From Macrostomum lignano (taxonomy: Eukaryota): a DNA stretch of 64,000 bases. The notes beneath the pieces were generated by a model. It was given only the letters and a program-made list of their open reading frames with translations. It did not search any database and was not told the DNA's origin. Numbering within the stretch: position 1 is the first letter of the stretch; each line of letters begins with the position of its first letter. Below, piece after piece: positions 3,758 through 45,590 of the stretch. The position numbers and the translations under genes were made by a program. Location of the stretch: contig NIVC01000020.1 of assembly GCA_002269645.1 (NCBI GenBank), positions 62,001-126,000 on the forward strand, read 5' to 3'.

Positions 3758-3952
3758 CACGCGCTCGATGTTGTATTTTAACTATCAGTGCGCAAGCTTT
3801 TTGCACACATAAAAGAGATTTGCTTCATATTCTTTCCATGCTACTCATCAGTAGGCAGTATCGTAATTTCAAGCCAAAATCTTCCAGAAATGGCAATGGC
3901 AGCCGGGAAAGACAGAAGCAGTAAAACTGCCGATCAGCAGTTTCGAACCTAC

Positions 3953-4621
3953 CTGCAAGGTGGTCTCCAGCTGCATGTCCGGATACGAGAACACCTGCAC
4001 GCTGCCAAGCCCGGTTGTCATGAAGAAGGCGTCCCCGGTGCAGTTCCAGGACACCTCGTTCACCTCCAGCTTGAACTGCTCCTCGCGGGCCACCTTGCGC
4101 GTCTTCACGTCAACAAAGGAGACGAGGTCCTCCTTGTTGCCCACGGCGATGCACTCGCCATTGGGCGACCAGGTCACGTTGATGTTCTCGCCGCGGAGCA
4201 CCAGCGTGGCCACCGAGTGCTGCGTGCGGGCGTCCCACAGGCGCAGCGACTTGTCCGAGCTGGCGGTGGCCAGCAGGCTGGGGTGGCGCGGGTTCCAGCA
4301 CAGCTGGTCCACACTGCCCGTGTGGCCCTTGAATGTGACGTCCTTGGACAGGCGGCCGGAGTCCAGGGAGAACAGGTTGACGACGCGGTCTACGGAGCCT
4401 GTAGCCAGCCGGGAGCCGTCGCTGCTCCACTTGAGGGTGTGGATCTTGCCGGAGTAGGAGTTGTACTCCCGGCTGCGGCTGGGGCCGCGCAGCAGGGCGC
4501 GCAGGCCTGCCAGGGAGTCCACTGTGGGCGGTGGCGGCGGCGGCGACATTGAGGGCTGGAGGCCGCTGGGCTGCGGGGTGGGAGAAATGTCAGGCTTAGT
4601 GGTGGATTGTTGAGCCAGCAT
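3953..4621 (-). CDS. THOC3: THOC3 exon 1 (start at ATG 4621 or 4549)
   Basis: WD40 repeats KIHTLKWSSDGSRLATGSVD, KGHTGSVDQLCWNP...LLATASSDKSLRLWD, GENINVTWSPNG, EVNEVSWN. Donor CAG|GTAGG at 3952, phase 0. Confidence 0.92.
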
Positions 4622-11255: not shown

Positions 11256-14200
11256 CACGCCTCCCCTGAAGAGAGAGTTTGGTCAATGAAATATACCCTA
11301 AAAAATATTGATTTCCCATGAATCTATGACCCAACAGAAGTCCAAAAAAGCAATAGTTGAAATCCTATCGCATTGTCTGCATAGTGTACAGGTATGCTAA
11401 TTAGTACAGTGATTTTTAGTACCAGGTAGGTACTACAAGAAGAACAAGAAGGTCTGAGAGAACATGGCAACCATCCTGCAGCAACGAAAATGCTAAAACA
11501 AGGTAGAATTTACGTTTCTGTTCATTCTCTGTCACTTATGGTTCATTAATAGTATTTTTATTACCTGTCCATACCTGACTGAGATTAATTTACACATGGA
11601 GCTTGTGTTTTCCTAGTAACGTTTTCAATTTTTTAAAGTTTTTGGAGCAGTGAAGCGATAGACTGGCACTGAGAGTCAAAACAAAGCCAGTAACTATTGA
11701 AGAGAGAAAAGTTTCGCAAAAACAGAAAGCATAAGCAGAGGTCATTGGGAATTACAAGCTTATTTTGGCGGCAAATGACTACACGGGTAGAATAACTAGA
11801 GTAAAATAGCTAGAATAGTTGTTAAAGCTAGTACAATATTTAGTAAAACAGAAAGTTCTTGCAATTTGCGAAGACAAGCCTACAGAATTTCTGGAAACCT
11901 TGTGTGCTGCAGAATAAAAAAGACATGCATTGACTGATGTAGAGCAAACCCGAATTCAAGTTCCAGCTACTGTGATACAGTACCATTACATGTACTTCAA
12001 GCACTTCATTTCATAGAAGGCCTTAAAACCTGCGACAACTTTCTGCTTTACCCAATACAAACATACGAGTTTAGTGGGTTGTCAAAATACAAGCATTGAA
12101 TGTAACAGCAAAACCAATGTACTAACTACTAACTACTTTTTTCAACAGTTTACTTGTAGTTATCTTGGCAGTAGTAAATTGGAATTTGCAAGTTACAAGT
12201 TATGACATATTTGGCTCAGATGTGAAATGAATTATAGTTTATGATGGATTGCAGTAGACACGTGCTATACTGAGGATGATTTAGGGGGCGCTTATAGCGC
12301 TGCCAGGTGGCTTCGAAGTCACTGTGGGCTGATTCAACAGCCTGTTCACTGAAGCTGCCAAGCCCCTTGCCATACTTGCTGCAGAACGCTGGCACATGGT
12401 CAAAAAGCGCGTGCATCTTTGGCGTAACTGAAAGCTCGAGGTACCTACATGTCGTCTGGAAGCGAGCAATGTAGAGACTGTAATCATCTGCCAGACTTTG
12501 GCCAAAGCAAGCTTCGCGCACAGCGTTGAAGTCTTGAAGTGCTGTTGCGTAGAGCTTCAGGTGTGGAGGCAGCACGCTCCACAGCTCACTCGCCTTCAGA
12601 AGGAGCTTTTTGCACGCTGGGCCCTCCAGGCAACCTCCATGATACTGCTGCCTGCAGATGCCTGCTTCATAGGCCCACTCGTAGGCCTTGTTGCCACCCC
12701 AGCTTGCATTGAGAGCGTCAAGCAATCGGTTCACAATGCCAAGCATCATGTGCAGCTCTGGCGGTGGTACCACGTCCAGCAGTTCAGCAGAATCGCTCCC
12801 AGGTAGCAGTGGAGGCTGGACGCAGTTGGCAAAGTTTTTGGCTAGAGGCTGGTGTCCACCAGCTGCCTGAAACTCACTTGCCAGGTGTCGAATTGAGCCG
12901 AGCGTCCTCCTTTGTGCTGGTACTTCCCATGGAGGCCTGCCCTCACAGTACAGGCAGGGATGCGATGAAGAATGGCTCTGGATCCCGCTGATTATGTTTG
13001 CCAGTTTAAAATCGCAGGCCAACGTGAAGTTAATGGAGCTGATGTCGATGGTTGACATTAGTACACTAACGTTCTGGTAGCATTCTTTGACATCCTCAAC
13101 AAGGGCCAGGATGAGGATCTTTTTCACTCCAGAGTCCATAAATCGGTTAAATTGGGCAGACGAAGTGCATCCTCTGCCATCCACGGTAACGCTGACGCAC
13201 ACCTTTAAGGAATTGCCTCCTCCATCAATCGCAAGTTTCACTCTCTGGTGCATCTCAGCAGTGCCTCTCGAGTTACTGACATGCGCCAGAAAAGCGTATA
13301 CATCCCGGCAGAACACGACAGACCGTTTGATCACACACTCTTGTCCATTAGGCTGTTTGCGGAAAAACTGCCGCTGCTCAGCTGTAAAAAACTTGGCGAC
13401 ACTCTGACCTTCAGCAAACAGAAACTCCTTCAGCCCAGACTGCACGGCCTTTTTGCTGCCGGACGCTTCTCTGATCACTTGAGCCGCACGTAGCGTCTGA
13501 CTGGTGCTGAGGTTGAGTGCAGTCTTTACGGCTCGCATAGTGCTATGCTGGACCGACGCAATCTCGGTAGTTGATGTACCAGCCACTTGAACTTGGAGTG
13601 GGCGCCCACCTGTGCCAGAAGTCAGGCTTGCAGTTGCTAAGGAGCCAGAAGAGGTGGCTACACCCAGCTTCTCACGCAGAAGACCGCAGGCTACGTGCTC
13701 CCTTGAGTAGGGGCTTAGGGCATCAAGATAGCGCAGTTTTGCCGCCTGTCCACACTGGTGCCTCAATCCACGTGCCACTGGTGATGAGCACGTCTCACAG
13801 CGTTTGACGACACTGTCTTCCATCGGCCCAGGTGCCTTATTTGGAGGGCGACCAAGTGGCGTCGCAATACCAGCAGCAGACTCATCTGGCATGAAAGGGT
13901 GATATACAGCCACATTCTTGTTGGCTCTGCTGGAGCCCACATGGCACACCCAGCAGTTGCAATCGGGCGTTCGCGAGTGAGTGGCGGAAGACAGCGCAGA
14001 TCTGCAATAACTTGCTCGTAGGGCATTTTTGGCGGCAGAGGTGTTGGTGCAGGGCTGCTTTGTGACATCAGCTTGATTCTGCAGGAGTTGCAGATGCTTA
14101 AAGGCAGAAATCCACGATGGTCAGCGAAGCCTGGCAGCACATGGCATTCAATCAGCGCTTCAAGAGTGGCTGTCAGCGGTCGGTCTCCCTTCCGAAAGCA

Positions 14201-18117: not shown

Positions 18118-19456
18118 GTAAACTGAGTAGGTAAGCTGAGCAGATGAACTGAGTGGGTAAACTGAGTAGATAAACTGAGTAGGTAAACTGAGTAGATAAA
18201 CTGAGCAGATGAACTGAGTGGGTAAACTGAGTGGGTAAACTGAGTAGATAAACTGAGTGGGTAAACTGGGCAGGTAAACTGAGTAGATAAACTGAGCAGG
18301 TAAGCTGAGCAGGTAAACTGAGTAGGTAAGCTGAGCAGGTAAACTGAGCAGGTAAACTGGGCAGGTAAACTGAGCAGGTAAACTGAGCAGGTAAACTGAG
18401 CAGGTAAACTGAGCAGGTAAACTGAGCAGGTAAACTGAGTAGGTAAACTGGGCAGGTAAACTGAGTAGGTAAACTGGGCAGGTAAACTGAGTAGGTAAAC
18501 TGGGCAGGTAAACTGAGCAGGTAAACTGAGTAGGTAAACTGAGCAGGTAAGCTGAGCAGGTAAACTGAGTAGGTAAGCTGAGCAGGTAAACTGAGCAGGT
18601 AAACTGGGCAGGTAAACTGAGCAGGTAAACTGAGCAGGTAAACTGAGCAGGTAAACTGAGCAGGTAAACTGAGCAGGTAAACTGAGTAGGTAAACTGGGC
18701 AGGTAAACTGAGTAGGTAAACTGGGCAGGTAAACTGAGTAGGTAAACTGGGCAGGTAAACTGAGTAGGTAAACTGGGCAGGTAAACTGAGCAGGTAAACT
18801 GGGCAGGTAAACTGAGCAGGTAAACTGGGCAGGTAAACTGAGCAGGTAAACTGAGCAGGTAAACTGAGCAGGTAAACTGAGCAGGTAAACTGAGCAGGTA
18901 AACTGAGTAGGTAAACTGGGCAGGTAAACTGAGTAGGTAAACTGGGCAGGTAAACTGAGTAGGTAAACTGGGCAGGTAAACTGAGTAGGTAAACTGGGCA
19001 GGTAAACTGAGCAGGTAAACTGGGCAGGTAAACTGAGCAGGTAAACTGGGCAGGTAAACTGAGTAGGTAAACTGGGCAGGTAAACTGAGTAGGTAAACTG
19101 AGTAGGTAAACTGAGCAGGTAAACTGAGTAGGTAAACTGAGCAGGTAAACTGAGCAGGTAAACTGAGCAGGTAAACTGAGTAGGTAAACTGGGCAGGTAA
19201 ACTGAGTAGGTAAACTGGGCAGGTAAACTGAGTAGGTAAACTGGGCAGGTAAACTGAGTAGGTAAACTGGGCAGGTAAACTGAGCAGGTAAACTGGGCAG
19301 GTAAACTGAGTAGGTAAACTGGGCAGGTAAACTGAGCAGGTAAACTGGGCAGGTAAACTGAGTAGGTAAACTGAGTAGGTAAACTGGGCAGGTAAACTGA
19401 GTAGGTAAACTGAGTAGGTAAACTGAGTAGGTAAACTGAGCAGGTAAACTGAGTAG
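18118..19456 (+). repeat. 13-bp minisatellite GTAAACTG(A/G)G(C/T)AG, about 103 units
   Basis: 1339 bp equals 13 x 103. The long minus-strand ORFs are repeat artefacts. Confidence 0.97.
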
Positions 19457-20605
19457 GTGAAAGTCTGAGTCTGCGCACATGGATGCAGCCGGAATATAAA
19501 ATTTATTTGCCATGGCCACCGTATAAAAAAGTATCCAAGTATCCAAATATTAATAAACACACAGCACAGCCAACTGCAAAATATTATATGAGTTATCAAA
19601 ACAATTCAATTACGTTGAGTGCAGCGAATGAGCTGGGGGGGGGGAGTAGAAATGAGCAGCTGACAATAATTTTCACCCCAGCGATCTTAAAGCAGTAGCA
19701 CGCCCGCCCAGTCTGATGTTTTCGACTGCAAAGGGTCTGAGAAAGCAAAGCAATTAATATTTTTTCAGTTATGCGCTTCTGGTGTCCAAGCCGACTTTTC
19801 CGTATCATTATAGCTGTGATGTTGGTAAAGATGGTCGGCACCTAGCGAGACACTGCTGAGCAGGTGCCACTGTCTCACCGCATTTTCTGCCTATTTGAAT
19901 ACTGCATATTTGGGTGTCTGTCTACGGACATATGATTCGAGCTCAGCCCCTGCGGCGCCACTGACAGACAGAATGAGCCACTATTGTTCAGTTTATTGCA
20001 GGGCGTCTATTCTTTTTTTAGAGCAAAACACAATAATATGAGCTATGTAGCAGTGGCACAATTGGCTGTCTTGAAAAAAACATCAACACCAAAATGAACT
20101 TCGGGCTGCATGGCTAGCAGCGGCTCCTGGAGGGGATGAAAAAAAACGAAAACTTAGTGCAGACACAGCCAAGAAAATAAAATTCTGTGTGATAATAATG
20201 GAAGCATATATCTCGCAGACTTCAGCAGCAGTAAGGGTTAGAAGCTAAGCATATAAATGTTATTGTTAATGTGTGCACTGGCAGCCAATTTTCAGCGATT
20301 TCAGTCAACCTTGCTCGTAGTAACGTTACGAGTTGCTTAAAAAAGTGAAGAATTAACTGTACAAAAAACTGAAAGCTCACTACTGAGCACTGTGATAAAA
20401 CAGATGCAGCAGCTTTGAGCATTCCAGAGGCTTTAGCAACGCTGCTCCAACTAAACCCATTCGCAGCAATTATAAAATGAAATCCGAGTGCAAAAAGAAA
20501 AAAAAGGAAAATTTAAGTTCAATAATCAATAAAAAGTGTACGGGTAACAAAAGTACATGACGCACTCACAGAGTAGTTGTCATGAAACGAAAGTTTATCT
20601 TTTCA

Positions 20606-23600
20606 TCACTTAAGCTCACGGTTTTCCTGTTCACCTGTGGGCGTGTTGTCAGTGGGTTGCTCTGGAGTTTTCCTGGGCAGCAGCGAGGTGAGGTACAGGT
20701 TCAGCGCCAGGTCGCTGCCCGCCAGGTTCGCATTGAAGCTGCCCAAACACCTGGGACACCTGGCCTCCAGCGTGTGTCCCGAGAACTCCGACACCAGGGA
20801 CTCCCTTTTGCACAGCGGGCACCCGTACTTGCATGTCTGCAGACCCTTCAGTGAGGCGAACAGCTTTTCAGCGACGCCCGGTCCGCGCTCTTTGAAGGCG
20901 GCTCTCTCGGCCTCAGTCAGCTGCTCCTCGGTCCAGAACACATCGATGAACTTCATCCTGAGCACGGCTGCGCTCTGCACTCTGAAGAAGCCGCCGTCGC
21001 CCCAGCCGGAGCCCACGAGTTCATCAGCCTCAGGCTGTGTCTGTCGAAGCTCATCAGCACCACCGCGTGTCCGAAAGTCTTCTGTGCAACGGGTCTTTGG
21101 CTGATGTCGATTTCCGACTTTGTGAGAATGCCTTCGGGATTCTGCTTGAAGAACTGCTTGAAGCTGCCCCACTCGCTCTTAGTGAGGTGGAACCTCGCCA
21201 CGACTGGCTGCTTGGCGATGACGGCGTCCAGCGCGGCTCTCTCATCGACCTCCTTGCACTGCAGCCGGTACTCCGGACACACTGTCCGCAGCACCTCGAC
21301 TGTGCGGGCTCTGCGCTGTCCGAACTGAGCGACGATCTCGTCTCTGAGCTGGAAGAAGTCTGGATATCCGCCGTCCCGACCCACAACCCTGAGCATGCTC
21401 AGGTGCATGACGGTCGCCGACGCGACTGCATAGCAGGTGAGCTCCGACTGTCGCTGCGGCTCGAAGCCCTCGTTGGCCCTGTTGATGTACAGGTCGAGGT
21501 CCACGTCGGCCAGCACGTCCGACAGCGCGTCCTGCGAGCACACGCAGCTCTTGGCGATGTCGCAGACCTCGTCGATGAGGTCGGGGTGATTGATCTGGAA
21601 GAACAGTCGGGTTTCATTGTTGTCGGTGTCGATTGTCCAGCCCTTTCGGGTGAACAGGGTTCTGGGGACCTTCTGGGTGGAGACTGTCGAAGCCATGTGG
21701 AACATAGTCTTCGCTGCTTTTTCCCACTCCTCGCAATCCGAGCTGTAGAGGCGACGCGGTTCACGCATGTCTGTCTTTGTAATGTAGCAGGATACAATTG
21801 TGACCTCTGCGTCCTGAAGTTGCTTCAACAGAGCTTTCTGGTCGAACCTTTTTAAATCGGCAGGTTCGCCGTCGGATAAAACGAATAAAAGTTTATCGTT
21901 CTTTCGTGTTTTGCAGACATGGCGTTTAAAAAGACCAATCGAGTTGTACATTGCCTCCATCAGCGGAGTTCCTCCGTAAATGTAGGGCTCCAAGGCTTCC
22001 ACCAGCTCGTCGATGTCCTGATCCGTCAGCTCCGTCTCGCCATCGGCGCAGGTGCGCAGAATAGTTTTGGCTTCCTTTGCACTGAATATGGACTTTTGCG
22101 ACATGTGAAGAAGTTGTTTAGGTGGAAACTGATTTTTCCATTTCTTTTTAATATAGTCTCTGCACTTCTGTACGACATCCCTCACGGACTCCTCAGTGGC
22201 TCCGCTCACACGACTGTCAGTAGATTTCTCTGCACCTTGAACAGCAGCAGCGGCTACACCTGCTGCGAGTGGCAGAGCTGCTCCTCCTGTTACCGGGACT
22301 GCTAACAATCCACCACCTATGAGTAAAGCTTTACCTATCGTTGCTCCAATTTTGGCTTTGGTCCATCCCCTCTTGGCCATTTCTGAGTCACGATTCTTAC
22401 ATTCTGCAGGAATGAACTCGTTCACGACTCTCTTCAAGAAGTCATTATTGGCTTCAAGCGCCTTGTAAATCTGTTTGGCGGCATCTAGAGTTACCAAATT
22501 TTGAAAGTCGATTTCGTGAAGCTTGTCGCTCAGCTTTGGCGAACCATTTTTTTCGAGTATTGATATAGCTTCCTTTACAATGTCTGCAAGTAGTCCCTGC
22601 CTGTGCTCATGATCCAATTCATTTTGCGTAAGCCTTTTGAGTTCTTTAATGGTTCTATGTACAGCCGCACTCGTTGCCGCGGTCTTCACTTCTTTTGCAA
22701 GAGGAATCTGAGAACAAAATCGTAAGTGTTCGTGATAGAAATCGGGAAAATCAATGTCCGCAAGAGCCGGTCCTTCATTATTATCCTTCCGCATTATCCA
22801 ACGGACTCCTCCTACTGCTGCTGCTGCTGCTGCAGCTTCTGGCATGAGCATTAGTGTGGCCCATGTTGGAGCTGGTGCAGCTATTTCTCTTACACTGCTT
22901 TGAATTTTCTGCTCAAATAATTCTTGCAATTTTTTACTTCGTCTCTTACATTCTTCAGGAATCAGTTTGTTTGTTGCCTTTTCCAAAAAGTCTTTATTAT
23001 TTTGAAGCTGATTCAGAATCGCAGCGGCACTGTCAAAGTTGACCATCTGGCCGATGTCAATTTCCATGAGTTCTGAACTCAGATCGGGAGCTCCGTTTTG
23101 CTCTAGAAGCTTTATTGCTTGGTCAATAAGGCTCTTCATTAGATAGGCTTTGCATTTTTCAATCACACGTTTTGCAGCATTGGTTGTAGCAGTTTTTTTC
23201 ACTTCATCTGAGGCACTCAAAGGCTGATTTAGTTTTGCCACGGTTCTCCGCGCACTGCTAGAAGGGTTTCTGCATTCGTCTGGAAGAAATTCCATGGCCA
23301 TTTTATGCCGAAAGTCTTCGTCCGTCTTGAGATGGTCAAGAATCTGATATGCAACGTGGAGATCCACAGCTTTGTGCATGATGTCCATTCTGCCCCAGAA
23401 TCGGATTTCTGTTGCACCTTCATTTTCTAGTATGGAGAATGCTTCATCAAATACTTCGACCTTTCCGGGGTAACTCCGCCACAGTTCGCGCACCCCCTGC
23501 ATTCTCACCCGGATGGCCTCGATTTCAGGTCTCCTTTCATCGAGCGAAGCGAGAATGTCAAAGACCACTGGGGACTGCGGAATGCCTTCCGCTCTATCCT

Positions 23601-24171
23601 CGGCTCCAACGCCGATCGCAAACACGCGGCTCTCCTCCGGTGCGTCCTGCTCGATCAGCTGATCAGCAACTCTGAAGATGGAGCGAACCCACTTGTTACG
23701 AACTACGTATCCCACTGCCTCGGCAGCCTTCTCCGAGCTGAAGCTTTCTTTCATTGACCCCGACACGTCCAGCAGCACTCCAGTCAGCACCGACCTTGCT
23801 GGGCTGGCCTCCGCTTCAGGTGGTGCTTCAGCCTCCGCTTCAGGTGGTGCTCCAGCCTCCGCTTCAGGTGGTGTTTCAGCCTCCGCTTCAGGTGGTGCTC
23901 CAGCCTCCGCTTCAGGCGGTGCTCCAGCCTCCGCTTCAGGTGGTGCTCCAGCCTCCGCTTCAGGCGGTGCTCCAGCCTCCACTTCAGGCGGTGCTTCAGC
24001 CTCCGCTTCAGGCTGTGCTTCAGCCTCCGCTTCAGGCGGTGCTCCAGCCTCCGCTTCAGGTGGTGCTCCAGCCTCCGCTTCAGGCGGTGCTCCAGCCTCC
24101 ACTTCAGGCGGTGCTTCAGCCTCCGCTTCAGGCTGTGCTTCAGCCTCCGCGTCAGGTGGCGTTTCAGCCTC
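20606..24171 (-). CDS. vWA domain (split by three helical repeats) + papain-like cysteine peptidase + C-terminal CxxC..CxxC Zn ribbon; large last exon with one frameshift at 21012-21014
   Basis: MIDAS motifs VLLDVSGSM, GGTPL, FVLSDG. Peptidase motifs RQSELTCYAVASA (Cys), FGHAVVL (His), MNSW then GSGWGDGGFFRV after restoring one base. Ends CPLC...CPRC. Acceptor ctttgcag| at 24172. Confidence 0.85.
23800..24170 (-). repeat. 24-bp coding tandem repeat (PPEAEAGA)n at the 5' end of the large exon
   Basis: About 15 in-frame copies within the 1074-aa ORF. Confidence 0.9.
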
Positions 24172-25061
24172 CTGCAAAGTTAAGCAATTGCCAGGGCTAT
24201 GAAGGATGCTTTAACAGTTTCAATAGACTTATGAAAATGTTTGCCATTTCAAGAACAAATCGCATATGAATTCTATTAGCTTATTTGACTGCTTATTGAT
24301 AAAAATGATAAGCCTTAGTCAAAGGAACATAAAGATTGCGGCAACAGAAATACAGAAGATGAACACAACAGACAATATAGGCGAGTTTAAATTATATCTC
24401 ATCTAGTGTCTAATTAATTTTTAGTATGCAAAAGTTATAGCCCTGAGCCCTTTGAATTTAGCCCTTTGAATTTTGAATTTGAAATAAATTCTATTCGAGC
24501 TACTATAATTTTGTCAGCTACAGCTATGGATGTACAAAACTTCGAATAAATAAATGCATAGTGGAATAATACATAAATAAATAAATAAACGCAATAACTG
24601 CGGCTGAACTGTCGGTTGCACAGCAGCCTATTTGGGGCAGGTGTAATCAATTAATAAATTATTAGTATTTATTAACTAATTATTAACTAACTAAGCATTA
24701 AAACTTCAAAAAACTCAAGCGGGTTTTGTAGTCTTTCTGTTCGCGCATGAACAACTCAGGAGCTCCCGAACTGAAAATAAGTTGAAGCAAGCTTTCCATT
24801 GTTCGAAGCTAGAGCAGTTTTGAAACGGTACGTTTTTGTGGTACTCACGGAAAATTGACGCATTTAAACAAATTTTTTTATTCATTGACGATGCTCAGAT
24901 AATTTTCTTTCTTTCTTCCAATTAATATTAATATTGTGACAGTTCTAATTGAAATGCGTTTTTGTTATAAACGAATTTGTCTTTAAATTTGGTTTAAAAC
25001 TTGAGTCCCAACACCTACTTTGGTACGGAAATTGGTATAATTTCAACGCATGCAGGGGTAC

Positions 25062-30961: not shown

Positions 30962-32218
30962 TCATTTGTCTTTGCCTTCCTCGTCGTTGTCGGAGTCGCA
31001 GTCGCAGTCGCAGACGCTGAGAATTTGAACCAAAAGTGCATCGAAGAATGCTTTCTTAGTCGCGTCATCGAGCGGAACCGGAGCGCCATTGATCTCGTCA
31101 GTCACGACGTCTCCCATCGGGATGTGTTGCCCAACTTTCTTGCAGTTGCCGCAACGCGCCACGGCACGAAACTGTTGGCCGTCATACTCGATGGTGATCA
31201 TTCTGCTGGGAGCAGCACGCGGGTTGCCCCGGGCTTTGTGGAATTCATGCAGCGCGTGCTGCTCCGCGCAGCTCGGCTCACCTCCAGCCGAACCGCGGAC
31301 TTTAGGCGCTCCGTTCGGGAACTTTTCGTTCAGCATCCGCTGTGTGGTTGCTTCCTCGCCTTGGAAGGGATCCAGGCGCTGTGCCTTCCGAAGGCGGAAG
31401 GAATAGCCGGTGTATGCGGTACCTTCCACATCGATTACCATGGCGCACTTGGTTCCTTTGAGGCCTTCGGGGCCAGATTTTACAGCTTCCTTCATCTGTA
31501 GAGCGACATGCTGGATTTCTCGGACAATGACATCTACCGATTCTGCGCCCGCCAGTTCGAGTTTTCCCTGGCGAACTGCCTCGACGATTTCACTCTTCAT
31601 CTGTGCGTACGCAGCTCTTTTCGCTGTGAAATTCTCTACGGCCTTTGCACCGCGGTAACCTGCCACACCATCAAAAACAAACGTCACCACCCAGTCGAAG
31701 CCTTCTCCAGCTGACATTTTACTGTTGCGGAGTTGGTCTACTGCATGAAAGTGTCCGTACAGCCGCTTTTCGTTATGAAGAGCCGAATCAACTGCAGATA
31801 TGATCCCATCCATTGCTGCTCCCCCAGCAACTCCTCCGGCAACGGCTCCCGCGGGACCACAGGCAGCACAGCCAGCAATCCCACCTCCGAGAACGCCCAC
31901 TGAACGCGAGGCCGCCTTCATGGCTTTGTCACCGCCCTCTCTGTCACCGAATGCGTAATGGCCGGCACCTTTCACGTGGCCGAGAACTGGAACTGCATCG
32001 GCAAAGTCGGAAACTCCCTGAAGAAAGTAGAGTTGGGACTCTTTAGCAAATTCAGAATTACCGCTAGCAAGAGCGACAGTTGCCACAACCTGCGATACAA
32101 CAGGGCAACCCTTGACAAAGTTTTTTTGTGTTTGCTTGGCACCTTCGGTGTCGCCAGCAATCAGCTGGACCGCACTTTTTGTTTGGGAGATTACCGGCAG
32201 GCTGTCTGTATTTCCCAT
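30962..32218 (-). CDS. Intronless 418-aa protein: myristoylation signal, helical hairpin repeats, glycine zipper, and a C-terminal zinc-dependent nucleic-acid deaminase-fold domain (CAE...CxxC, YwqJ-like)
   Basis: MGNTDS start. Repeats PVISQ / PVVSQ / PVLGH. GVLGGGIAG...GPAGAVAGGVAGGAAMDG. Deaminase-like AYTGYS...SCAEQHAL...ARCGNC...MGDVVTD. Confidence 0.8.
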   Translation of the reverse strand: MGNTDSLPVISQTKSAVQLIAGDTEGAKQTQKNFVKGCPVVSQVVATVALASGNSEFAKESQLYFLQGVSDFADAVPVLGHVKGAGHYAFGDREGGDKAMKAASRSVGVLGGGIAGCAACGPAGAVAGGVAGGAAMDGIISAVDSALHNEKRLYGHFHAVDQLRNSKMSAGEGFDWVVTFVFDGVAGYRGAKAVENFTAKRAAYAQMKSEIVEAVRQGKLELAGAESVDVIVREIQHVALQMKEAVKSGPEGLKGTKCAMVIDVEGTAYTGYSFRLRKAQRLDPFQGEEATTQRMLNEKFPNGAPKVRGSAGGEPSCAEQHALHEFHKARGNPRAAPSRMITIEYDGQQFRAVARCGNCKKVGQHIPMGDVVTDEINGAPVPLDDATKKAFFDALLVQILSVCDCDCDSDNDEEGKDK

Positions 32219-36197: not shown

Positions 36198-38351
36198 ATG
36201 CCGGACCTGACAAAGCCTGGCCGTCGAGAGCTGCTGCTCAGCCGGCTGCGGCAGCTGCTTGGCAGCTCCACAGCTCACGGCGTGAACAAGCTGGTGCAGC
36301 AAGACACCAACTGGACGGTGCGCGTGATCTGGTTCACGATCTTTGTCAGCGCCGTCTGCGGGGTGACGCTGCACACGGCCACCGTCATTCGCCTGTACTT
36401 CAGCTACCCCGTCAGCTCCACGGTGCGCCAGGAGGTCAACGGATTCGAGTTCCCGGACGTCACCATCTGCGACACCATGCTGAAGAAGTTCTTCCTGTAC
36501 AATGTGTCCCACTATGACCGGCGCACTGAGGACCGCGCCTTCAGCCGCTTCTCCCAGGTGGTGCAGACGATGTTGGGCTACCAGTTCGGCTGGGAGTCCA
36601 AGAAGTTCCTGAAGGCCACCTACACGGCCTCCGGCCACATGTTCAACATGTCTGAGGTCAGCGCCAGGGCACAGGACTTTGTGCTGTACTGCGAGTTCGA
36701 CCAGAAGCCGTGCAGTCACAAAGACTTCGTCCTGTACTACGACAAAGAGTACGGCAACTGCTACACCTTCCAGCCGGCGTCCAGGCAGCTGGAGAAGGCG
36801 GGAGCAGAGATGGGTCTCATCATGGTACTGTACCCGCCCTCAGTCGATGCGAACTTCGAGGAGGACCGCATCATGAAGACGGCCACAGGCCTGGAGAGCA
36901 AAGGCTTCCAGGTGACGGTTCATCAGCGCAACACGCGGCCGGACCCGCACGAGTTCGGCATCACCGCCCCGGTCGGCATGCGCACCGACTTCGCGCTGTC
37001 GCAGGCGAAGATCCGCCTGGCCAACACGAACACGCGGCCCTGCGCCCCGGCCGGCGTGCGCCGCTTCTGGAACCCCTTCCTCCGCCTCCACCAGGAGTAC
37101 GAGGACCGCCTCTACAGCTGCGTGGAGAATGAGGACGCGCTGAGCCTGCTCAGAACCTGCCGCTGCACCATCGAAGGCCTGATACCAGCGGAGGAAAAAC
37201 GCCTGCTGCAGGCGGATTACTGCCACGACATCCTCGACATGCGGAACTTCAACAGCAGCCGCTTTGCCAGAGTCTCCAACCTGGTGCTCAACATGTGGCG
37301 CATCTTCTCCGAGGAGCGCAAGAGGAAGTACGCAGCCCTCATCGTCAAGGTGATCGGCGCCAAGATCATCGAGAAGTTTCCCGATCTCGGCGAGCGGCTC
37401 AACCGGGCTGAGTGCGCTTACAACTTCTCGCAGAAGCAGAGCCTCTCTCTGTGCCTGAACGAGTGCCAGTACAGCGAGTACTCGTCCGCCATTGCGCTGG
37501 CCGAATGGCCGGACCGAACTTTCGCCAGCCGAGGCAGCCTCATCCGCATCAAGAAGCTGGGCAGCATGCTCGCCGACTACATCTCTGTGGTGGCGAACCT
37601 GACGCCGCCTGCAGCTCTGGTCACTTCGCTGGGCATCTCCAATCGAAACGTGTCTAGCTGCCGGGAGGACATCCACCCCAACTACGACCCCGCGGCGCTG
37701 GAGGACACTGACTGCACGGACCTGCAGCGGTTCGTCAGCAACACGCTGGTGCAGGTGAGGGTCTACCCCAAGACGCTCACCGTGCGCCTGCTGATTGAGG
37801 AGCGGAGCTACGAGCTCGAGAAGCTCTTCTCAGACATTGGCGGCATCCTCGGCCTGTGGGTCGGCATCAGCGTCATCACCATCTTCGAGCTGGCGGAGAT
37901 CGCAGTGCTGTCTGCTGCCTTCCTCTACAACCTTATCAACAAGCCCGGCGGCGCCAGCGGCCAGCAGCAGCCGCCAAACTCGTCACCCACTCGCCGGGTC
38001 GATGAGGCACTCGAGGCTTCAGAACCGCCTCAGCGGCTGCTGCAGCGGCGAAGGCAGCGGCTTGACCCGCGAGATCAGGCCGAGTCACCGCCGCTGCTGC
38101 CACATCAAAATGGCAGCCTTCTTCGGCATCAGCAGCAGCAGCAGCAACAGCTTCAGCCACAGAAGCAACTACATCAAGAGCAAAGCCAGCAACAAGAACA
38201 ACTGCTGCCGCAGAGGCAACAAGCAGAGCAAGAACAGCAGAAGAAAAAGCAGCAGGACAGCCAAGAGCAATCGCAGCAGCAACGGCGTCACGTGATGTTG
38301 CAGCAGCGGAAGGACATCTGTTTAAACTACGATATTGAGACAACGCTGTGA
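36198..38351 (+). CDS. Intronless DEG/ENaC/ASIC-family sodium channel subunit (717 aa) with a Gln-rich C-terminal tail
   Basis: STAHGV (HG motif), TM1 VIWFTIFVSAVCGV, FPDVTIC, YGNCYTF, Cys-rich thumb, TM2 LFSDIGGILGLWVGISVITIFEL. Confidence 0.95.
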   Translation: MPDLTKPGRRELLLSRLRQLLGSSTAHGVNKLVQQDTNWTVRVIWFTIFVSAVCGVTLHTATVIRLYFSYPVSSTVRQEVNGFEFPDVTICDTMLKKFFLYNVSHYDRRTEDRAFSRFSQVVQTMLGYQFGWESKKFLKATYTASGHMFNMSEVSARAQDFVLYCEFDQKPCSHKDFVLYYDKEYGNCYTFQPASRQLEKAGAEMGLIMVLYPPSVDANFEEDRIMKTATGLESKGFQVTVHQRNTRPDPHEFGITAPVGMRTDFALSQAKIRLANTNTRPCAPAGVRRFWNPFLRLHQEYEDRLYSCVENEDALSLLRTCRCTIEGLIPAEEKRLLQADYCHDILDMRNFNSSRFARVSNLVLNMWRIFSEERKRKYAALIVKVIGAKIIEKFPDLGERLNRAECAYNFSQKQSLSLCLNECQYSEYSSAIALAEWPDRTFASRGSLIRIKKLGSMLADYISVVANLTPPAALVTSLGISNRNVSSCREDIHPNYDPAALEDTDCTDLQRFVSNTLVQVRVYPKTLTVRLLIEERSYELEKLFSDIGGILGLWVGISVITIFELAEIAVLSAAFLYNLINKPGGASGQQQPPNSSPTRRVDEALEASEPPQRLLQRRRQRLDPRDQAESPPLLPHQNGSLLRHQQQQQQQLQPQKQLHQEQSQQQEQLLPQRQQAEQEQQKKKQQDSQEQSQQQRRHVMLQQRKDICLNYDIETTL

Positions 38352-40876: not shown

Positions 40877-41894
40877 AAGCGCCTGCTGCAAGAGCCCATT
40901 GTACACACGAAGCGCCTGCTGCAAGAGCCCATTGTACACACGAAGCGCCTGCTGCAAGAGCCCATTGTACACACGAAGCGCCTGCTGCAAGAGCCCATTG
41001 TACACGCGAAGCGCCTGCTGCAAGAGCCCATTGTACACACGAAGCGCCTGCTGCAAGAGCCCATTGTACACACGAAGCGCCTGCTGCAAGAGCCCATTGT
41101 ACACGCGAAGCGCCTGCTGCAAGAGCCCATTGTACACACGAAGCGCCTGCTGCAAGAGCCCATTGTACACGCGAAGCGCCTGCTGCAAGAGCCCATTGTA
41201 CACACGAAGCGCCTGCTGCAAGAGCCCATTGTACACGCGAAGCGCCTGCTGCAAGAGCCCATTGTACACACGAAGCGCCTGCTGCAAGAGCCCATTGTAC
41301 ACGCGAAGCGCCTGCTGCAAGAGCCCATTGTACACACGAAGCGCCTGCTGCAAGAGCCCATTGTACACGCGAAGCGCCTGCTGCAAGAGCCCATTGTACA
41401 CGCGAAGCGCCTGCTGCAAGAGCCCATTGTACACGCGAAGCGCCTGCTGCAAGAGCCCATTGTACACACGAAGCGCCTGCTGCAAGAGCCCATTGTACAA
41501 GCGAAGCGCCTGCTGCAAGAGCCCATTGTACACACGAAGCGCCTGCTGCAAGAGCCCATTGTACACGCGAAGCGCCTGCTGCAAGAGCCCATTGTACACA
41601 CGAAGCGCCTGCTGCAAGAGCCCATTGTACAAGCGAAGCGACTGCTGCAAGAGCCCATTGTACACACGAAGCGCCTGCTGCAAGAGCCCATTGTACACGC
41701 GAAGCGCCTGCTGCAAGAGCCCATTGTACACACGAAGCGCCTGCTGCAAGAGCCCATTGTACACGCGAAGCGCCTGCTGCAAGAGCCCATTGTACACACG
41801 AAGCGCCTGCTGCAAGAGCCCATTGTACACGCGAAGCGCCTGCTGCAAGAGCCCATTGTACACGCGAAGCGCCTGCTGCAAGAGCCCATTGTAC
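40877..41894. repeat. 33-bp near-perfect minisatellite aagcgcctgctgcaagagcccattgtacac(a/g)cg, about 31 units
   Basis: Direct inspection. Two alternating variants. Confidence 0.97.
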
Positions 41895-42209
41895 TCGTTC
41901 GGGCCAAACAGCCGCCCCCAATGCAAATCCGCCGGTGGGCTGGGGCGGTCACGCACCGCTCTCTGCCAGCTCTACAGATCTGTCTGCGGTGGAGTGAGAG
42001 AGCTCTTAATTAAAAATCCCGGGAGCTGGAGTCATTTCTGCTGCAATAGGTCTTGGAGTCAGGAAAGCAAAGCAATTTCTGTGTTTTGGAAGGAGAGACG
42101 GACCAGAGGGCCGGAATGTTCCTGAGCTGAAATTATTTGTGCTTTGGCGTGCAAGTATGCGGCTCGTGCTATCTACATGTATCACCCTGTCCTCAGATCT
42201 AAGCAAATC

Positions 42210-43290
42210 CTCCGAATATAGACAAGCCTCCAAATCTAGACACCCCTCCGAATCTAGACACCCCTCCGAATCTAGACACTCCTCCTAATCTAGACACCCC
42301 TCCTAATCTAGACACCCCTCCTAATCTAGACACCCCTCCGAATCTAGACACCCCTCCTAATCTAGACACCCCTCCGAATCTAGACACCCCTCCGAATCTA
42401 GACACCCCTCCGAATCTAGACACCCCTCCGAATCTAGACACCCCTCCTAATCTAGACACCCCTCCTAATCTAGACACCCCTCCGAATCTAGACACCCCTC
42501 CTAATCTAGACACCCCTCCTAATCTAGACACCCCTCCTAATCTAGACACCCCTCCTAATCTAGACACCCCTCCAAATCTAGACACCCCTCCGAATCTAGA
42601 CACCCCTCCTAATCTAGACACCCCTCCTAATCTAGACACCCCTCCTAATCTAGACACCCCTCCGAATCTAGACACCCCTCCTAATCTAGACACCCCTCCT
42701 AATCTAGACACCCCTCCTAATCTAGACACCCCTCCGAATCTAGACACCCCTCCGAATCTAGACACCCCTCCTAATCTAGACACCCCTCCTAATCTAGACA
42801 CCCCTCCGAATCTAGACACCCCTCCGAATGTAGACAACCCTCCGAATCTAGACACCCTCTGAATCTGGACACCCCTCCAAATCTAGACACCCCTCCGAAT
42901 CTAGACACCCTCCAAATCTAGACACCCTCCGAATCTAGACACCCTCCGAATCTAGACACCCTCCGAATCTAGACACCCTCCGAAGCTAGACAATCCCTCC
43001 AAATCTATAGACACCCCTCCGAATCTAAACACCTCTCCAAATCTAGACACCCCTCCGAGTCTAGACACCCCTCCTAATCTAGACACCCTCCAAATCTAGA
43101 CACCCTCCGAATCTAGACACCCTCCGAATCTAGACACCCTCCGAATCTAGACACCCTCCGAAGCTAGACAATCCCTCCAAATCTATAGACACCCCTCCGA
43201 ATCTAAACACCTCTCCAAATCTAGACACCCCTCCGAGTCTAAACACCTCTCCAAATCTATAGACACCCCTCCGAAGCTAGACACCCCTTT
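42210..43290. repeat. 17-18-bp minisatellite aatctagacacccctcc(g/t)
   Basis: About 60 copies, degenerating at the right end. Confidence 0.95.
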
Positions 43291-44122: not shown

Positions 44123-44574
44123 AAAGACAGCTGGTATTTTATTCAAACCCAGCTTATGCAGATGTAATAAAACTTGTCTATAAATAGTGCCGTCCTCGCA
44201 CTGGGCCGCGGTTCAGACTGCGTGTGATGCTGCGGAATGCGACGCCACAGACAGTTTGTCACCGCGATGCCCTTAAGCGTCATCACAGGGCCGGACCGGA
44301 TTGCAGCTGCGACTGCAGGCCCAGACACACAAGGATAAAAAAGTTTTCTTAAAGCGGCATTACCGCCCAGGCGATCCCAGGCGCTCAGAAGCCGCCGGCC
44401 GTAATTTAGATTTCGAATTTGATTAGGCCGCCGCTGCTGCCAGTGCATTCGGCAAATATTAAACTGGCTTTGGCGTTCGCTGCGCACTAAGAGCGACTTT
44501 GGCCTCCGTAAAACTCAAAATGAACTTTAAGAGCCATTGTGCAACGCTGATTTTCCCTGTCAAAGACTGAGCCC

Positions 44575-45590
44575 TGTACCAGAAACCCTATCCCTGAACC
44601 AGAAACCCTATCCCTGAACCAGAAACCCTATCCCTGAACCAGAAACCCTAGCCCTGAACCAGAAACCCTATCCCTGAACCAGAAACCCTATCCCTGAACC
44701 AGAAACCCTATCCCTGAACCAGAAACCCTAGCCTTGAACCAGAAACCCTAGCATTGAACCAGAAACCCTAGCCCTGAACCAGAAACCCTAGCCCTGAACC
44801 AGAAACCCTAGCCCTGAACCAGAAACCCTAGCCCTGAACCAGAAACCCTAGCCTTGAACCAGAAACCCTATCCCTGAACCAGAAACCCTAGCCCTGAACC
44901 AGAAACCTCAGGCCTGAACCAGAAACCTCAGCCCTGAACCAGAAACCTCAGGCCTGAACCAGAAACCCTAGCCCTGAACCAGTAACTTCAGCCCTGAACC
45001 AGAAACCCTAGCCCTGAACCAGAAACCTCAGGCCTGAACCAGAAACCTCAGGCCTGAACCAGAAACCCTAGCCCTGAACCAGAAACCTCAGGCCTAAACC
45101 AGAAACCCCAGCCCTGAACCAGAAACCCTAGCTTTGAACCGGAAACATCAGGCCTGAACCAGATACCCTAAGCCCCTGAACCAGAAACCCTATCCCTGAA
45201 CCAGAAACCCTATCCCTGAACCAGAAACCCTAGCTCTGAACCAGAAACCTAAGGCCTGAACCAGAAACCCCAGGCCTAAACCAGAAACCCTAGCCCTGAA
45301 CCAGTAACCTCAGCCCTGATCCAGAAACCCTAGCCCTGAACCAGAAACCTCAGCCCTGAACCAGAAACCTCAGGCCTGAACCAGTAACCTCAGCCCTGAA
45401 CCAGAAACCCTAGCCCTGAACCAGAAACCTCAGCCCTGAACCAGAAACCTCAGGCCTAAACCAGAAACCCTAGCCCTGAACCAGAAACCCTATCCCTGAA
45501 CCAGAAACCCTATCCCTGAACCAGAAACCCTAGCCCTGAACCAGAAACCTAAGGCCTGAACCAGAAACCCCAGGCCTAAACCAGAAACCT
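44575..45590. repeat. 20-bp minisatellite gaaccagaaaccctagccct
   Basis: About 50 copies with variants. Confidence 0.95.

What the first reader, a model, noticed from the sequence alone, without database searches (positions are those of the whole stretch)
20606..24171. vWA / triple helical repeat / papain-like protease / Zn-ribbon fusion protein
Seen: the vWA MIDAS DxSxS is separated from its T and D by about 550 aa. This insert holds three roughly 60-aa repeats (AFSILENEG...FLPDECRN; AIKLLEQNG...LIPEECKR; AISILEKNG...FIPAECKN) and hydrophobic glycine-zipper segments (IGATIGKALLIGGGLLAVPVTGGAALPLAAGVAAA). An intact Q/C/H/N papain catalytic set and a CxxC..CxxC ribbon follow, with no signal peptide or cathepsin prodomain evident. 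Inference: this is a cytosolic sensor-protease, possibly releasing a membrane-active helical module as in immune or conflict effectors.
Basis: partly seen in the sequence, partly recalled or inferred. Interest (0 to 1): 0.7.

Follow-up and report, generated by a model that had tools for sequence, protein, structure and literature searches.

The report
Uncharacterised split-vWA papain-like protease gene
This flatworm-type gene encodes a large protein, apparently cytosolic, that joins a metal-dependent binding domain (vWA, split by three copies of an undescribed helical module) to a papain-like protease and a zinc ribbon. It belongs to a large, unstudied eukaryotic family, and this copy has a broken reading frame in the assembly.

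Summary
They are a vWA domain with a complete MIDAS motif, three ~65-aa helical modules and two Gly/Ala-rich hydrophobic stretches inserted in that domain, a papain-type Q/C/H/N set, and a four-Cys zinc ribbon.

The reading frame changes by one base at 21013, inside the NSW|G motif. The exon has no ATG before the MIDAS motif.

The protein belongs to a large family with 1590 representative clusters. Named members come from cnidarians, echinoderms, annelids, molluscs, a nematode, a tardigrade, a teleost, a ciliate, a foraminiferan and a fungus. All are annotated only as uncharacterised or with automatic domain names. Most have one helical module. The closest relative is a Macrostomum lignano paralog with a nearly identical protease domain and an intact frame.

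MIDAS, catalytic and zinc residues are nearly invariant across 39 diverse members. AlphaFold plus Foldseek confirms the papain and vWA folds. The helical module matches nothing solved. One relative carries two N-terminal Death domains and another a C-terminal WD40 propeller.

Best reading: a ligand- or assembly-gated cytosolic cysteine protease. Release of a membrane-active module is not supported, because the hydrophobic linker is the least conserved part.

The parts
24172..24177 (-). TTGCAG, a possible cis- or trans-splice acceptor immediately before the first codon of the exon (GAG at 24171)
   Evidence: Sequence read and located. It matches the M. lignano trans-splice acceptor motif [T/C]TNCAG (PMC8629364). 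It is a short motif, so the evidence is weak.
23806..24171 (-). Acidic low-complexity N-terminal region (EAEAGAPP)n, encoded by a 24-bp minisatellite with 15 copies
   Evidence: TRF and translation. No relative has a counterpart. Other frames are also open here, so coding is not certain.
23527..23793 (-). N-terminal part of the vWA domain (strand 1, DxSxS loop, helix 1, strands 2-3). DVSGS is at 23755-23769.
   Evidence: Alignment with relatives; D, S, S conserved in 39, 39 and 38 of 39 members; strand and helix order from the AF2 model of relative P0003.
23263..23457 (-). Helical module copy R1, the canonical copy, which keeps the R-x-W motif
   Evidence: 64.5 bits, E 4e-22 against an HMM built from relatives only; alignment A5.
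22936..23136 (-). Helical module copy R2, a derived copy that has lost R-x-W
   Evidence: 40.1 bits, E 1e-14; alignment A5.
22792..22884 (-). First hydrophobic, Ala-rich linker stretch, including a poly-Ala run from a (CTG)9 repeat at 22815-22841
   Evidence: Hydropathy maximum 1.45; TRF.
22387..22584 (-). Helical module copy R3, a derived copy that has lost R-x-W
   Evidence: 43.8 bits, E 1e-15. The AF2 model of this unit has helices 2-81 with block-mean pLDDT above 90 to about residue 70.
22237..22353 (-). Second hydrophobic Gly/Ala/Pro-rich stretch (KIGATIGKALLIGGGLLAVPVTGGAALPLAAGVAAAAVQ)
   Evidence: Hydropathy maximum 1.83. AF2 predicts coil with pLDDT about 50. No Pfam glycine-zipper match. 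Similar stretches occur at the same relative position in about 12-13 of 90 relatives.
21562..22104 (-). C-terminal part of the vWA domain. MIDAS Thr is at 21967-21969 and MIDAS Asp at 21871-21873.
   Evidence: Alignment; T in 34/39 and D in 37/39 members; profile hits to solved vWA domains, E 6e-9 to 8e-3.
21013..21489 (-). Papain-like (C1-type) peptidase domain up to the frame break. Gln 21448-21450, Cys 21433-21435, His 21067-21069, Asn 21019-21021.
   Evidence: Alignments; Q 36/39, C 38/39, H 39/39, N 38/39; fold confirmed on relative P0003.
21011..21016 (-). Frame break. The Trp codon of NSW and the Gly codon of GSGWG share base 21013. If read without a shift, the frame ends after 19 further codons (stop at 20953-20955).
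   Evidence: All eight relatives switch frame at 21010-21013 in tblastn. The M. lignano paralog P0006 reads NSWGSGWGDGGFFRV without a break.
20933..21013 (-). Last strands of the papain-like domain in the second frame (GSGWGDGGFFRVQSAAVLRMKFIDVFW)
   Evidence: Alignment. This is the segment that matches papain and mexicain best.
20729..20836 (-). Four-Cys zinc ribbon (CPLC...CPRC). Cys codons at 20819-21, 20810-12, 20756-58 and 20747-49.
   Evidence: The four Cys are conserved in 39, 39, 39 and 38 of 39 members. Pfam zinc-ribbon matches are weak.
20606..20716 (-). Conserved C-terminal amphipathic helix (SDLALNLYLTSLL, 20678-20716), a short non-conserved tail, and the stop codon at 20606-20608
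   Evidence: Alignment; helix 694-709 in the AF2 model of P0003.

Best explanation
The locus encodes, or recently encoded, one paralog of a large, uncharacterised eukaryotic protein family.

Shown:
- The protein has a vWA domain with a complete metal-ion-dependent adhesion site (MIDAS).
- That domain is interrupted just before the MIDAS-Thr loop by a ~65-aa helical-bundle module, a variable linker and further helices.
- A papain (C1)-type cysteine peptidase domain follows. It has the Gln/Cys/His/Asn set but no signal peptide or prodomain, and lacks the extra Cys of papain's GSCGSCW motif.
- After that come a four-Cys zinc ribbon and a terminal amphipathic helix.
- In this copy the module-linker-helix unit is present three times. 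Two linkers are Gly/Ala-rich and hydrophobic.

Inferred mechanism:
- The protein is cytosolic and works as a gated protease.
- The vWA MIDAS face, with the inserted modules emerging next to it, binds a partner or assembles a complex.
- The papain-like domain is the output and cleaves substrates or itself.
- Extra modules change what is bound or its valency.
- Death-domain and WD40 fusions in relatives suggest a role in cell-death or innate-immunity-type signalling.

Whether this copy is expressed intact is open. The assembly shows a one-base frame break in the protease domain, and the exon lacks its own ATG. That ATG could come from an upstream exon or from the M. lignano spliced leader, which ends in ATG and would be in frame at 24171.
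For: Architecture:
- The window aligns collinearly with relatives of 678-710 aa.
- A 39-member profile hits solved vWA domains (PTMP1 6e-9, collagen VI 2e-7, TRAP 9e-5, TFIIH p44 5e-3). It also hits papain-family enzymes (mexicain 5e-6, papain 2e-5), with the family Gln and Cys on papain's NQGSCGSCW motif.
- The AF2 model of relative P0003 has pLDDT 79.8 and pTM 0.71.
- Foldseek matches it to xylellain, papain and cathepsins K/S/L (E 4e-5 to 1e-3, probability 1.0). It also matches vWA domains (E 0.02-0.04, probability 0.96-1.0).

Active-site conservation: MIDAS D/S/S/T/D in 39/39/38/34/37 of 39, Q/C/H/N in 36/38/39/38 of 39, zinc Cys in 39/39/39/38 of 39.

Family size and spread:
- There are 1590 representatives at E<=1e-3 and 381 at E<=1e-30.
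- Named taxa include animals, Paramecium, a foraminiferan and a fungus.

Signalling link:
- P0028 has two N-terminal Death domains (PF00531, 8e-17). It is recovered identically from two independent SRA assemblies.
- The P0139 cluster has a C-terminal WD40 propeller.

Domain-specific variation:
- The peptidase domain is the most conserved (0.42 pairwise identity) and the linker the least (0.12; 0-95 aa).
- The window and its M. lignano paralog are 97-100% identical in the peptidase domain but only about 45-60% in the vWA half. The paralog has one module and the window three.
- Module copy number also varies elsewhere (2, 3, 4 and 6 copies).

Start codon: TTGCAG at 24172-24177 fits the trans-splice acceptor motif, and the spliced leader ends in ATG.
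Against: - No biochemical or expression data exist for any member. Protease activity, metal binding, ligand and cellular location are all inferred.
- The window sequence itself does not reach Pfam thresholds for vWA or Peptidase_C1. The fold evidence comes from a relative with 37-38% identity to the window.
- Death and WD40 fusions were found in only two clusters among 275 sequences examined. They may not reflect the function of the whole family.
- The window copy has a frame break and no ATG of its own, so it may be a pseudogene.
- I could not inspect model coordinates. The position of the modules relative to MIDAS and to the active site is inferred from topology only.
- The acceptor motif is short. 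I estimate a chance in-frame occurrence in the ~40-nt interval at a few percent.
Confidence: 0.5

Rival explanations
1. First reader's model. On activation, the protease cuts out the insert, and its hydrophobic glycine-zipper segments attack a membrane, as a gasdermin-like or conflict effector would.
For: A 39-aa Gly/Ala/Pro-rich hydrophobic stretch follows module R3 (hydropathy 1.83). Comparable stretches occur at the same position in about 12-13 of 90 relatives, including a fungal one. The linker is predicted to be disordered, so it could be accessible to a protease.
Against: The linker is the least conserved element, ranges from 0 to 95 aa, and most members have no hydrophobic stretch. The conserved modules are compact amphipathic bundles, not membrane segments. 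The insert lies inside the vWA fold, so release needs two cuts and destroys the domain. There is no fold or sequence similarity to any pore former. The first hydrophobic stretch is largely a trinucleotide-repeat poly-Ala run.
Confidence: 0.08
2. The hydrophobic stretches are re-entrant hairpin anchors. They hold this paralog, and the minority of relatives that have them, on a cytosolic membrane face. Both flanks stay in the cytosol, and the protease acts there.
For: The stretch is about 39 aa with a central PVTGG break. Being inside a domain loop, both ends must emerge on the same side of a membrane. It recurs at the same position in a subset of relatives.
Against: Hydropathy is only borderline (1.83; the first stretch 1.45). 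AF2 gives coil at pLDDT about 50. No family-wide conservation. No localisation data.
Confidence: 0.15
3. This copy is a pseudogene with no function of its own. It is a decaying paralog whose start was overrun by a minisatellite and whose protease domain is frameshifted.
For: Frame break at 21013. No in-frame ATG before the MIDAS motif, and a 24-bp minisatellite sits where relatives have their start codon. The genome region is crowded with minisatellites and a reverse-transcriptase fragment.
Against: There is only one break in about 3.5 kb. Each frame segment is otherwise free of stops over 1053 and 135 codons, and all catalytic, MIDAS and zinc residues are intact. The break lies in a G run, a typical site of long-read assembly error (general knowledge; PMC8629364 mentions PacBio data for M. 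lignano). An in-frame ATG could be supplied by the spliced leader.
Confidence: 0.3
4. The papain-like domain is not a general protease. It is an isopeptidase for ubiquitin-like or other protein modifiers, with the zinc ribbon and vWA domain acting as modifier- or substrate-binding parts.
For: vWA plus zinc-finger combinations occur in ubiquitin- and transcription-linked proteins, and TFIIH p44 is among the vWA hits. The protein is apparently cytosolic, and the zinc ribbon is invariant.
Against: The closest sequence and fold matches are classical C1 endopeptidases (papain, cathepsins, xylellain), not deubiquitinase families. Zinc-ribbon matches to ubiquitin-binding fingers are insignificant (E 0.04-0.08).
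Confidence: 0.1

Closest known systems
Papain family (MEROPS C1, clan CA): papain, cathepsins K/L/S, xylellain; bleomycin hydrolase as a cytosolic example
   Same: Gln/Cys/His/Asn arrangement; the H...NSWGxxWGxxG[FY]FR motif; papain fold by Foldseek (probability 1.0) on a relative.
   Different: No signal peptide or I29 prodomain. The Cys paired with the nucleophile in papain's GSCGSCW is absent (GGTCYA). Gln lies 5 residues before Cys rather than 6. Fused downstream of a vWA domain and upstream of a zinc ribbon. Pfam scores are only at threshold.
Complement factor B / C2 (vWA followed by a protease domain); CLCA proteins (protease plus vWA)
   Same: A MIDAS-bearing vWA domain in one chain with a protease. 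In factor B, ligand binding at the MIDAS controls the protease (established knowledge). That is the working model adopted here.
   Different: Those proteins are secreted and use serine or metallo-proteases. Their vWA domain has no helical insert, and there is no zinc ribbon. No sequence relationship beyond the generic vWA fold.
Death-fold-linked proteases (caspases, MALT1 paracaspase)
   Same: One relative (P0028) places two Death domains in front of the vWA-protease core. This suggests recruitment-driven activation.
   Different: The protease fold is papain-like, not caspase-like. The window protein has no Death domain.
Prokaryotic MoxR-vWA conflict systems with C-terminal effectors (Kaur et al. 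2020, PMC7159879; 2021, PMC8195603)
   Same: A vWA domain followed in the same chain by a helical linker and an effector domain, often a peptidase. Association with Death-like adaptor domains.
   Different: No MoxR partner can be assessed in a eukaryote. No prokaryotic relative was found with two family peptide patterns. PADLOC and NCBIfam gave only weak generic vWA hits. The helical module lies inside the vWA domain, not after it.
TFIIH p44/Ssl1 and similar intracellular vWA plus zinc-finger proteins
   Same: An intracellular vWA domain combined with Cys4 zinc-binding modules; p44 appears among the profile and fold hits.
   Different: p44 has no protease and no helical insert. Similarity is at fold level only (E 5e-3).

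Membership tests
vWA domain with MIDAS | DxSxS ... T ... D metal-site motif | tested here: met
   DVSGS at residues 135-139, T735, D767 in the window. Conserved in 39/39/38/34/37 of 39 members.
vWA domain with MIDAS | Alpha/beta Rossmann-like vWA fold | tested here: met
   Tested on relative P0003, not on the window protein. AF2 strand and helix order. Foldseek hits to TRAP, ANTXR2, MDN1, Ku80 and integrin I domains at E 0.02-0.04. Family profile against solved vWA domains down to 6e-9.
vWA domain with MIDAS | Pfam VWA / VWA_2 gathering score reached by the window sequence | tested here: not met
   Window: VWA_2 at E 0.21, 12.6 bits against a cutoff of 27. Some relatives pass (P0121 34.0, P0042 29.2, P0163 28.8 bits against 23.8). 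The large insert splits the domain.
vWA domain with MIDAS | Divalent-cation-dependent ligand binding | not testable with these tools
   Needs biochemistry.
Peptidase C1 (papain family) | Catalytic Cys and His with oxyanion Gln and orienting Asn in papain order | tested here: met
   Q908, C913, H1035, N1051. Gln and Cys align on papain's NQGSCGSCW in a sub-significant stretch. H..NSW aligns at E 2e-5 to 5e-6. Conservation is 36-39 of 39.
Peptidase C1 (papain family) | Papain fold (L and R sub-domains) | tested here: met
   Tested on relative P0003. Foldseek hits to xylellain, papain and cathepsins at E 4e-5 to 1e-3, probability 1.0, target TM 0.4-0.59. In the window, the last strands lie beyond the frame break.
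Peptidase C1 (papain family) | Pfam PF00112 gathering score | tested here: inconclusive
   The window pieces give no hit. Four of six A1 members hit, best E 1.7e-6. Relatives score 21.2-23.7 bits against a cutoff of 20.7.
Peptidase C1A (secreted/lysosomal cathepsin type) | Signal peptide, I29-type prodomain, conserved disulfides | tested here: not met
   Relatives start with vWA strand 1. A vWA domain precedes the peptidase, with no I29 hit. GGTCYA lacks papain's second Cys. So this is not a cathepsin-type C1A member.
Peptidase C1 (papain family) | Proteolytic activity | not testable with these tools
   Needs an enzyme assay.
Zinc ribbon | Two CxxC knuckles about 17-20 residues apart | tested here: met
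   CPLC ...17 aa... CPRC. The four Cys are conserved in 39/39/39/38 of 39. Short strands are predicted around them. Pfam zinc-ribbon models hit only weakly (E 0.016-0.14).
Death-domain signalling proteins | A Death-fold domain in the protein | tested here: not met
   None in the window protein. Present only in relative P0028.
Pore-forming / membrane-active effectors (gasdermin-like, glycine-zipper families) | Recognisable pore-forming or glycine-zipper domain | tested here: not met
   No PDB or viral fold match for the module-linker unit. No Pfam match for six hydrophobic linkers.

The most novel reading that the evidence does not exclude
The family is an unrecognised class of eukaryotic cytosolic proteases gated by a vWA/MIDAS sensor. 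It would act in cell-death or innate-immune signalling, a papain-fold counterpart of caspases, paracaspases and factor B. The helical insert would be a new ligand-recognition fold, diversified by copy number and by exchange between paralogs.
Probability: 0.2. Interest if true: 0.8.

Novelty: new variant of a known kind. Interest (0 to 1): 0.55.

Why it matters
Proteases coupled to recognition domains drive complement, apoptosis and inflammasome signalling. This is a large and taxonomically broad family with intact metal-binding and catalytic sites. It has a helical insert with no solved relative, and occasional Death-domain or WD40 fusions. No study of it turned up in the library I searched. 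If it is a gated protease, it adds a papain-fold branch to eukaryotic cell-death and immune machinery. It would also give invertebrate models such as Macrostomum a tractable entry point. The window copy also illustrates how such genes vary: module triplication, near-identity of the protease domain between otherwise diverged paralogs, and minisatellite invasion of the 5' end.

Tried and rejected
- Pfam on the two window pieces gave nothing significant. Domain calls needed family profiles.
- The first homolog search returned only 4 proteins and missed the closest paralog, P0006. I suspect the query's low-complexity words filled the candidate list. The exhaustive representative search corrected this.
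- A search with the Death-plus-vWA N-terminus of P0028 returned nothing, not even P0028 itself, so it is uninformative.
- The prokaryote scan failed twice for lack of conserved columns. With A3 it then found no relative. Its sensitivity is limited to two peptide patterns.
- An exact look-up of the neighbouring ASC-channel ORF, meant to identify the organism, found nothing.
- Rfam found nothing in the window. No SL RNA gene is present in the window.
- PADLOC and NCBIfam gave only weak generic vWA hits.
- The PDB hit 6h9l_A to the module region (E 1.6e-3 with the 6-sequence profile) did not recur at E<=0.01 with the 39-sequence profile. No paper in the library mentions 6H9L. I treat the hit as spurious.
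- Alignment A4 (insert alone against full-length relatives) was visibly misaligned and was discarded.
- An intron at the frame break is rejected, because the two frames overlap by one base and the paralog is collinear.
- Programmed -1 frameshifting is rejected as unlikely, because I see no X_XXY_YYZ slippery heptamer in the sequence read.
- Three literature searches found no description of this architecture.
Full report
**What is in the sequence**

The gene lies on the minus strand. One frame is open from 24210 to 20953 and was listed as a 1074-aa ORF. It ends ...FGHAVVLMSFDRHSLRLMNSW, followed by 19 residues unrelated to the family and a stop.

A second frame (20606-21172) carries GSGWGDGGFFRVQ..., a CPLC...CPRC pair and the stop at 20606-20608. 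The Trp codon (21015-21013) and the Gly codon (21013-21011) share one base. All relatives read NSWGxxWGxxGFFRV without interruption. Eight relatives used as tblastn queries all change frame at 21010-21013. I analysed the two pieces separately.

The exon also has no in-frame ATG between the upstream stop (24213-24211) and the Met of DVSGSM. Its first ~122 codons, (EAEAGAPP)n, are a 24-bp minisatellite with 15 copies. Relatives start 3-15 residues before LLDVSGSM.

**Check of the listed features**

Residue numbers count from codon 24171.
- The MIDAS residues are D135-x-S-x-S139, T735 and D767.
- An HMM built from 37 relatives' modules, none from the window, finds three copies in the window protein. 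They score 64.5, 40.1 and 43.8 bits, with E 4e-22 to 1e-14.
- Copy R1 keeps the family's R-x-W motif. R2 and R3 have lost it.
- The repeated unit is module plus linker plus an 'ATxxxV..K' helix.
- The hydrophobic stretch after R3 (residues 607-645) peaks at hydropathy 1.83. The stretch after R2 peaks at 1.45 and is partly a poly-Ala run from a (CTG)9 repeat.
- The catalytic residues are Q908, C913, H1035 and N1051. The four zinc Cys are in place.

**Relatives and source organism**

A single-sequence search found only four relatives of 678-710 aa, at 37-39% identity. They come from a crinoid (Anneissia japonica), a soft coral (Dendronephthya gigantea) and two ENA assembly contigs. An exhaustive profile search of 1.84 billion representatives found 1590 at E<=1e-3, 1080 at E<=1e-10 and 381 at E<=1e-30.

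Named members come from these taxa:
- Animals: Macrostomum lignano, Dendronephthya, Anneissia, Holothuria, Owenia, Saccostrea, Mya, Panagrolaimus, Paramacrobiotus and the teleost Coilia grayii.
- Non-animals: Paramecium primaurelia, the foraminiferan Bolivina and an ascomycete fungus.

Every name is 'uncharacterized', 'hypothetical' or an automatic domain label. Two peptide patterns found no prokaryotic relative.

The closest relative is the first ~810 residues of an M. lignano model, P0006. That model is 3511 aa and labelled 'ribonuclease H'. Its peptidase domain is 97-100% identical to the window over about 230 residues. Its vWA half is only about 45-60% identical, it has one module rather than three, and its frame is intact. 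The window therefore most likely comes from M. lignano or a very close relative, and the two paralogs appear to have exchanged their protease-coding part. The window's density of minisatellites is compatible with that source.

**Domain identity**

- Individual Pfam scans are marginal. Peptidase_C1 hits four of six members (best E 1.7e-6) and VWA_2 hits four of six (best 6e-4). The window pieces themselves score nothing significant.
- A 39-member profile is clearer. It hits solved vWA domains from 6e-9 (PTMP1) to 8e-3, and papain-family enzymes at 5e-6 to 2e-5. The family Gln and Cys align on papain's NQGSCGSCW.
- The AlphaFold2 model of relative P0003 has pLDDT 79.8 and pTM 0.71. It shows vWA strand and helix order, interrupted after strand 3 and a short helix by the helical module (residues 87-149, pLDDT about 90). 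A low-confidence linker follows (159-210), then three helices that lead into the MIDAS-Thr loop.
- Foldseek places the C-terminal domain with xylellain, papain and cathepsins (E 4e-5 to 1e-3, probability 1.0). It places the N-terminal domain with TRAP, ANTXR2, MDN1, Ku80 and integrin vWA domains (E 0.02-0.04).
- Across 39 diverse members, the MIDAS, catalytic and zinc residues are conserved in 34-39 sequences each.
- Relatives begin directly with vWA strand 1. Nothing resembles a signal peptide or an I29 prodomain, and the GGTCYA motif lacks papain's disulfide Cys. I infer a cytosolic location.

**The helical module**

A model of the window's R3 unit has a helical module (helices 2-81) with block-mean pLDDT above 90 to about residue 70. 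It also gives a coil at pLDDT about 50 for the hydrophobic stretch, and a confident helix after it. Foldseek finds no significant match in the PDB (best E 4.7) or in BFVD. Sequence searches of the PDB and Pfam find nothing either. One weak PDB hit did not survive a deeper profile.

Most relatives have one module. Copy number reaches 2, 3, 4 and 6 in a few, notably in Owenia.

**Variation along the protein**

- Pairwise identity is highest in the peptidase domain (0.42) and the zinc ribbon (0.38).
- It is lower in the module (0.22) and lowest in the linker (0.12), whose length ranges from 0 to 95 aa.
- Gly/Ala/Pro-rich stretches of TM-like hydropathy follow the module in about 12-13 of 90 full-length representatives, including the fungal one.
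- They match no Pfam glycine-zipper family.

**Functional clues from fusions**

- P0028 carries two N-terminal Death domains (PF00531, 8e-17) before an otherwise canonical core. The identical ORF occurs in two independent SRA assemblies.
- The P0139 cluster (three members, from an AT-rich and probably protist source) carries a C-terminal WD40 propeller.
- Only these two clusters and one unannotated N-terminal extension were found among 275 sequences.

**Mechanism**

The shown part is the architecture and the conservation of the functional residues. The inferred part is a gated cytosolic protease:
- The MIDAS face and the adjacent inserted module(s) bind a partner or drive assembly.
- The papain-like domain is the output.
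- The zinc ribbon and terminal helix add a further contact.

The insert's C-terminal helix ends five residues before the MIDAS Thr. It therefore exits at the metal-site face. This is a topological inference, because I could not inspect coordinates. Functional analogues are factor B/C2 and Death-fold-recruited proteases. They are not relatives.

The conserved repeats are soluble-type bundles. The hydrophobic element is optional and hypervariable. The insert is embedded in the vWA fold. A hairpin-anchor role for the hydrophobic linker in the subset that has it is at least as plausible.

**Is this copy functional?**

- For decay: the frame break, the missing ATG and the minisatellite at the 5' end.
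- Against decay: there is a single break in about 3.5 kb of otherwise open frame, with every key residue intact. The break lies in a G run.
- The hexamer TTGCAG at 24172-24177 fits the M. lignano trans-splice acceptor motif [T/C]TNCAG. The 35-nt spliced leader ends in ATG (PMC8629364). Joined at 24171, that ATG would be in frame.
- The motif is short, so this is a testable suggestion and not a finding.

**Comparison and novelty**

- The protein meets the sequence and fold criteria of a vWA/MIDAS domain, a C1-type papain fold and a zinc ribbon.
- It fails the criteria of secreted C1A cathepsins.
- It is not a member of any Death-domain, pore-forming or known defence family tested.
- Three literature searches found no description of this architecture. 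The library is incomplete, so this is absence of evidence only.

I rate it a new variant of a known kind, a recognition-domain-coupled protease, and of moderate interest.

Noticed in passing
window 30962-32218 (-): An intronless 418-aa ORF on the same strand, 6.8 kb upstream. It starts MGNTDS (myristoylation-like) and has a Gly/Ala-rich hydrophobic stretch (SVGVLGGGIAGCAACGPAGAVAGGVAGGAAM) resembling the one in the finding. It also has a C-terminal C-A-E ...36 aa... C-G-N-C pattern with deaminase-like spacing. No Pfam or PDB sequence match.
   Followed up: partly
window 36198-38351 (+): An intronless 717-aa ORF for an amiloride-sensitive sodium channel (DEG/ENaC; PF00858, E 1.9e-60). The exact protein is not on record in the assembly collection.
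   Followed up: partly
window 3869-4621 (-), 60140-61087 (-), 12216-13949 (-): A THOC3-like WD40 ORF, a reverse-transcriptase fragment (RVT_1, 2e-17), and a 577-aa ORF with no Pfam match.
   Followed up: no
whole window, e.g. 18118-19458, 40877-41894, 42209-43288, 44570-45589: An unusually high density of minisatellites, with 34 TRF rows at score >=200 in 64 kb. Several create long spurious ORFs in multiple frames.
   Followed up: no
window 21013-21700 (-) against P0006: The peptidase domain is 97-100% identical to an M. lignano paralog whose vWA half is only about 45-60% identical and which has one module instead of three. This mosaic suggests gene conversion or exon exchange between paralogs.
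   Followed up: partly
L002 10612-12630 and 18726-19816: The Anneissia japonica locus carries a second, partial match about 6 kb downstream of P0001 at about 80% identity, which looks like a tandem paralog.
   Followed up: no
P0028 (L003, L004) and the P0139 cluster: Family members with two N-terminal Death domains, or with a C-terminal WD40 propeller.
   Followed up: partly
family profile positions 193-260 (P0003 about 213-275): HMMER aligns the helices after the linker to the helix 1 / strand 2-3 region of the PTMP1 vWA domain. This hints at a partial internal duplication of vWA elements around the insert. It remains unexplained.
   Followed up: no
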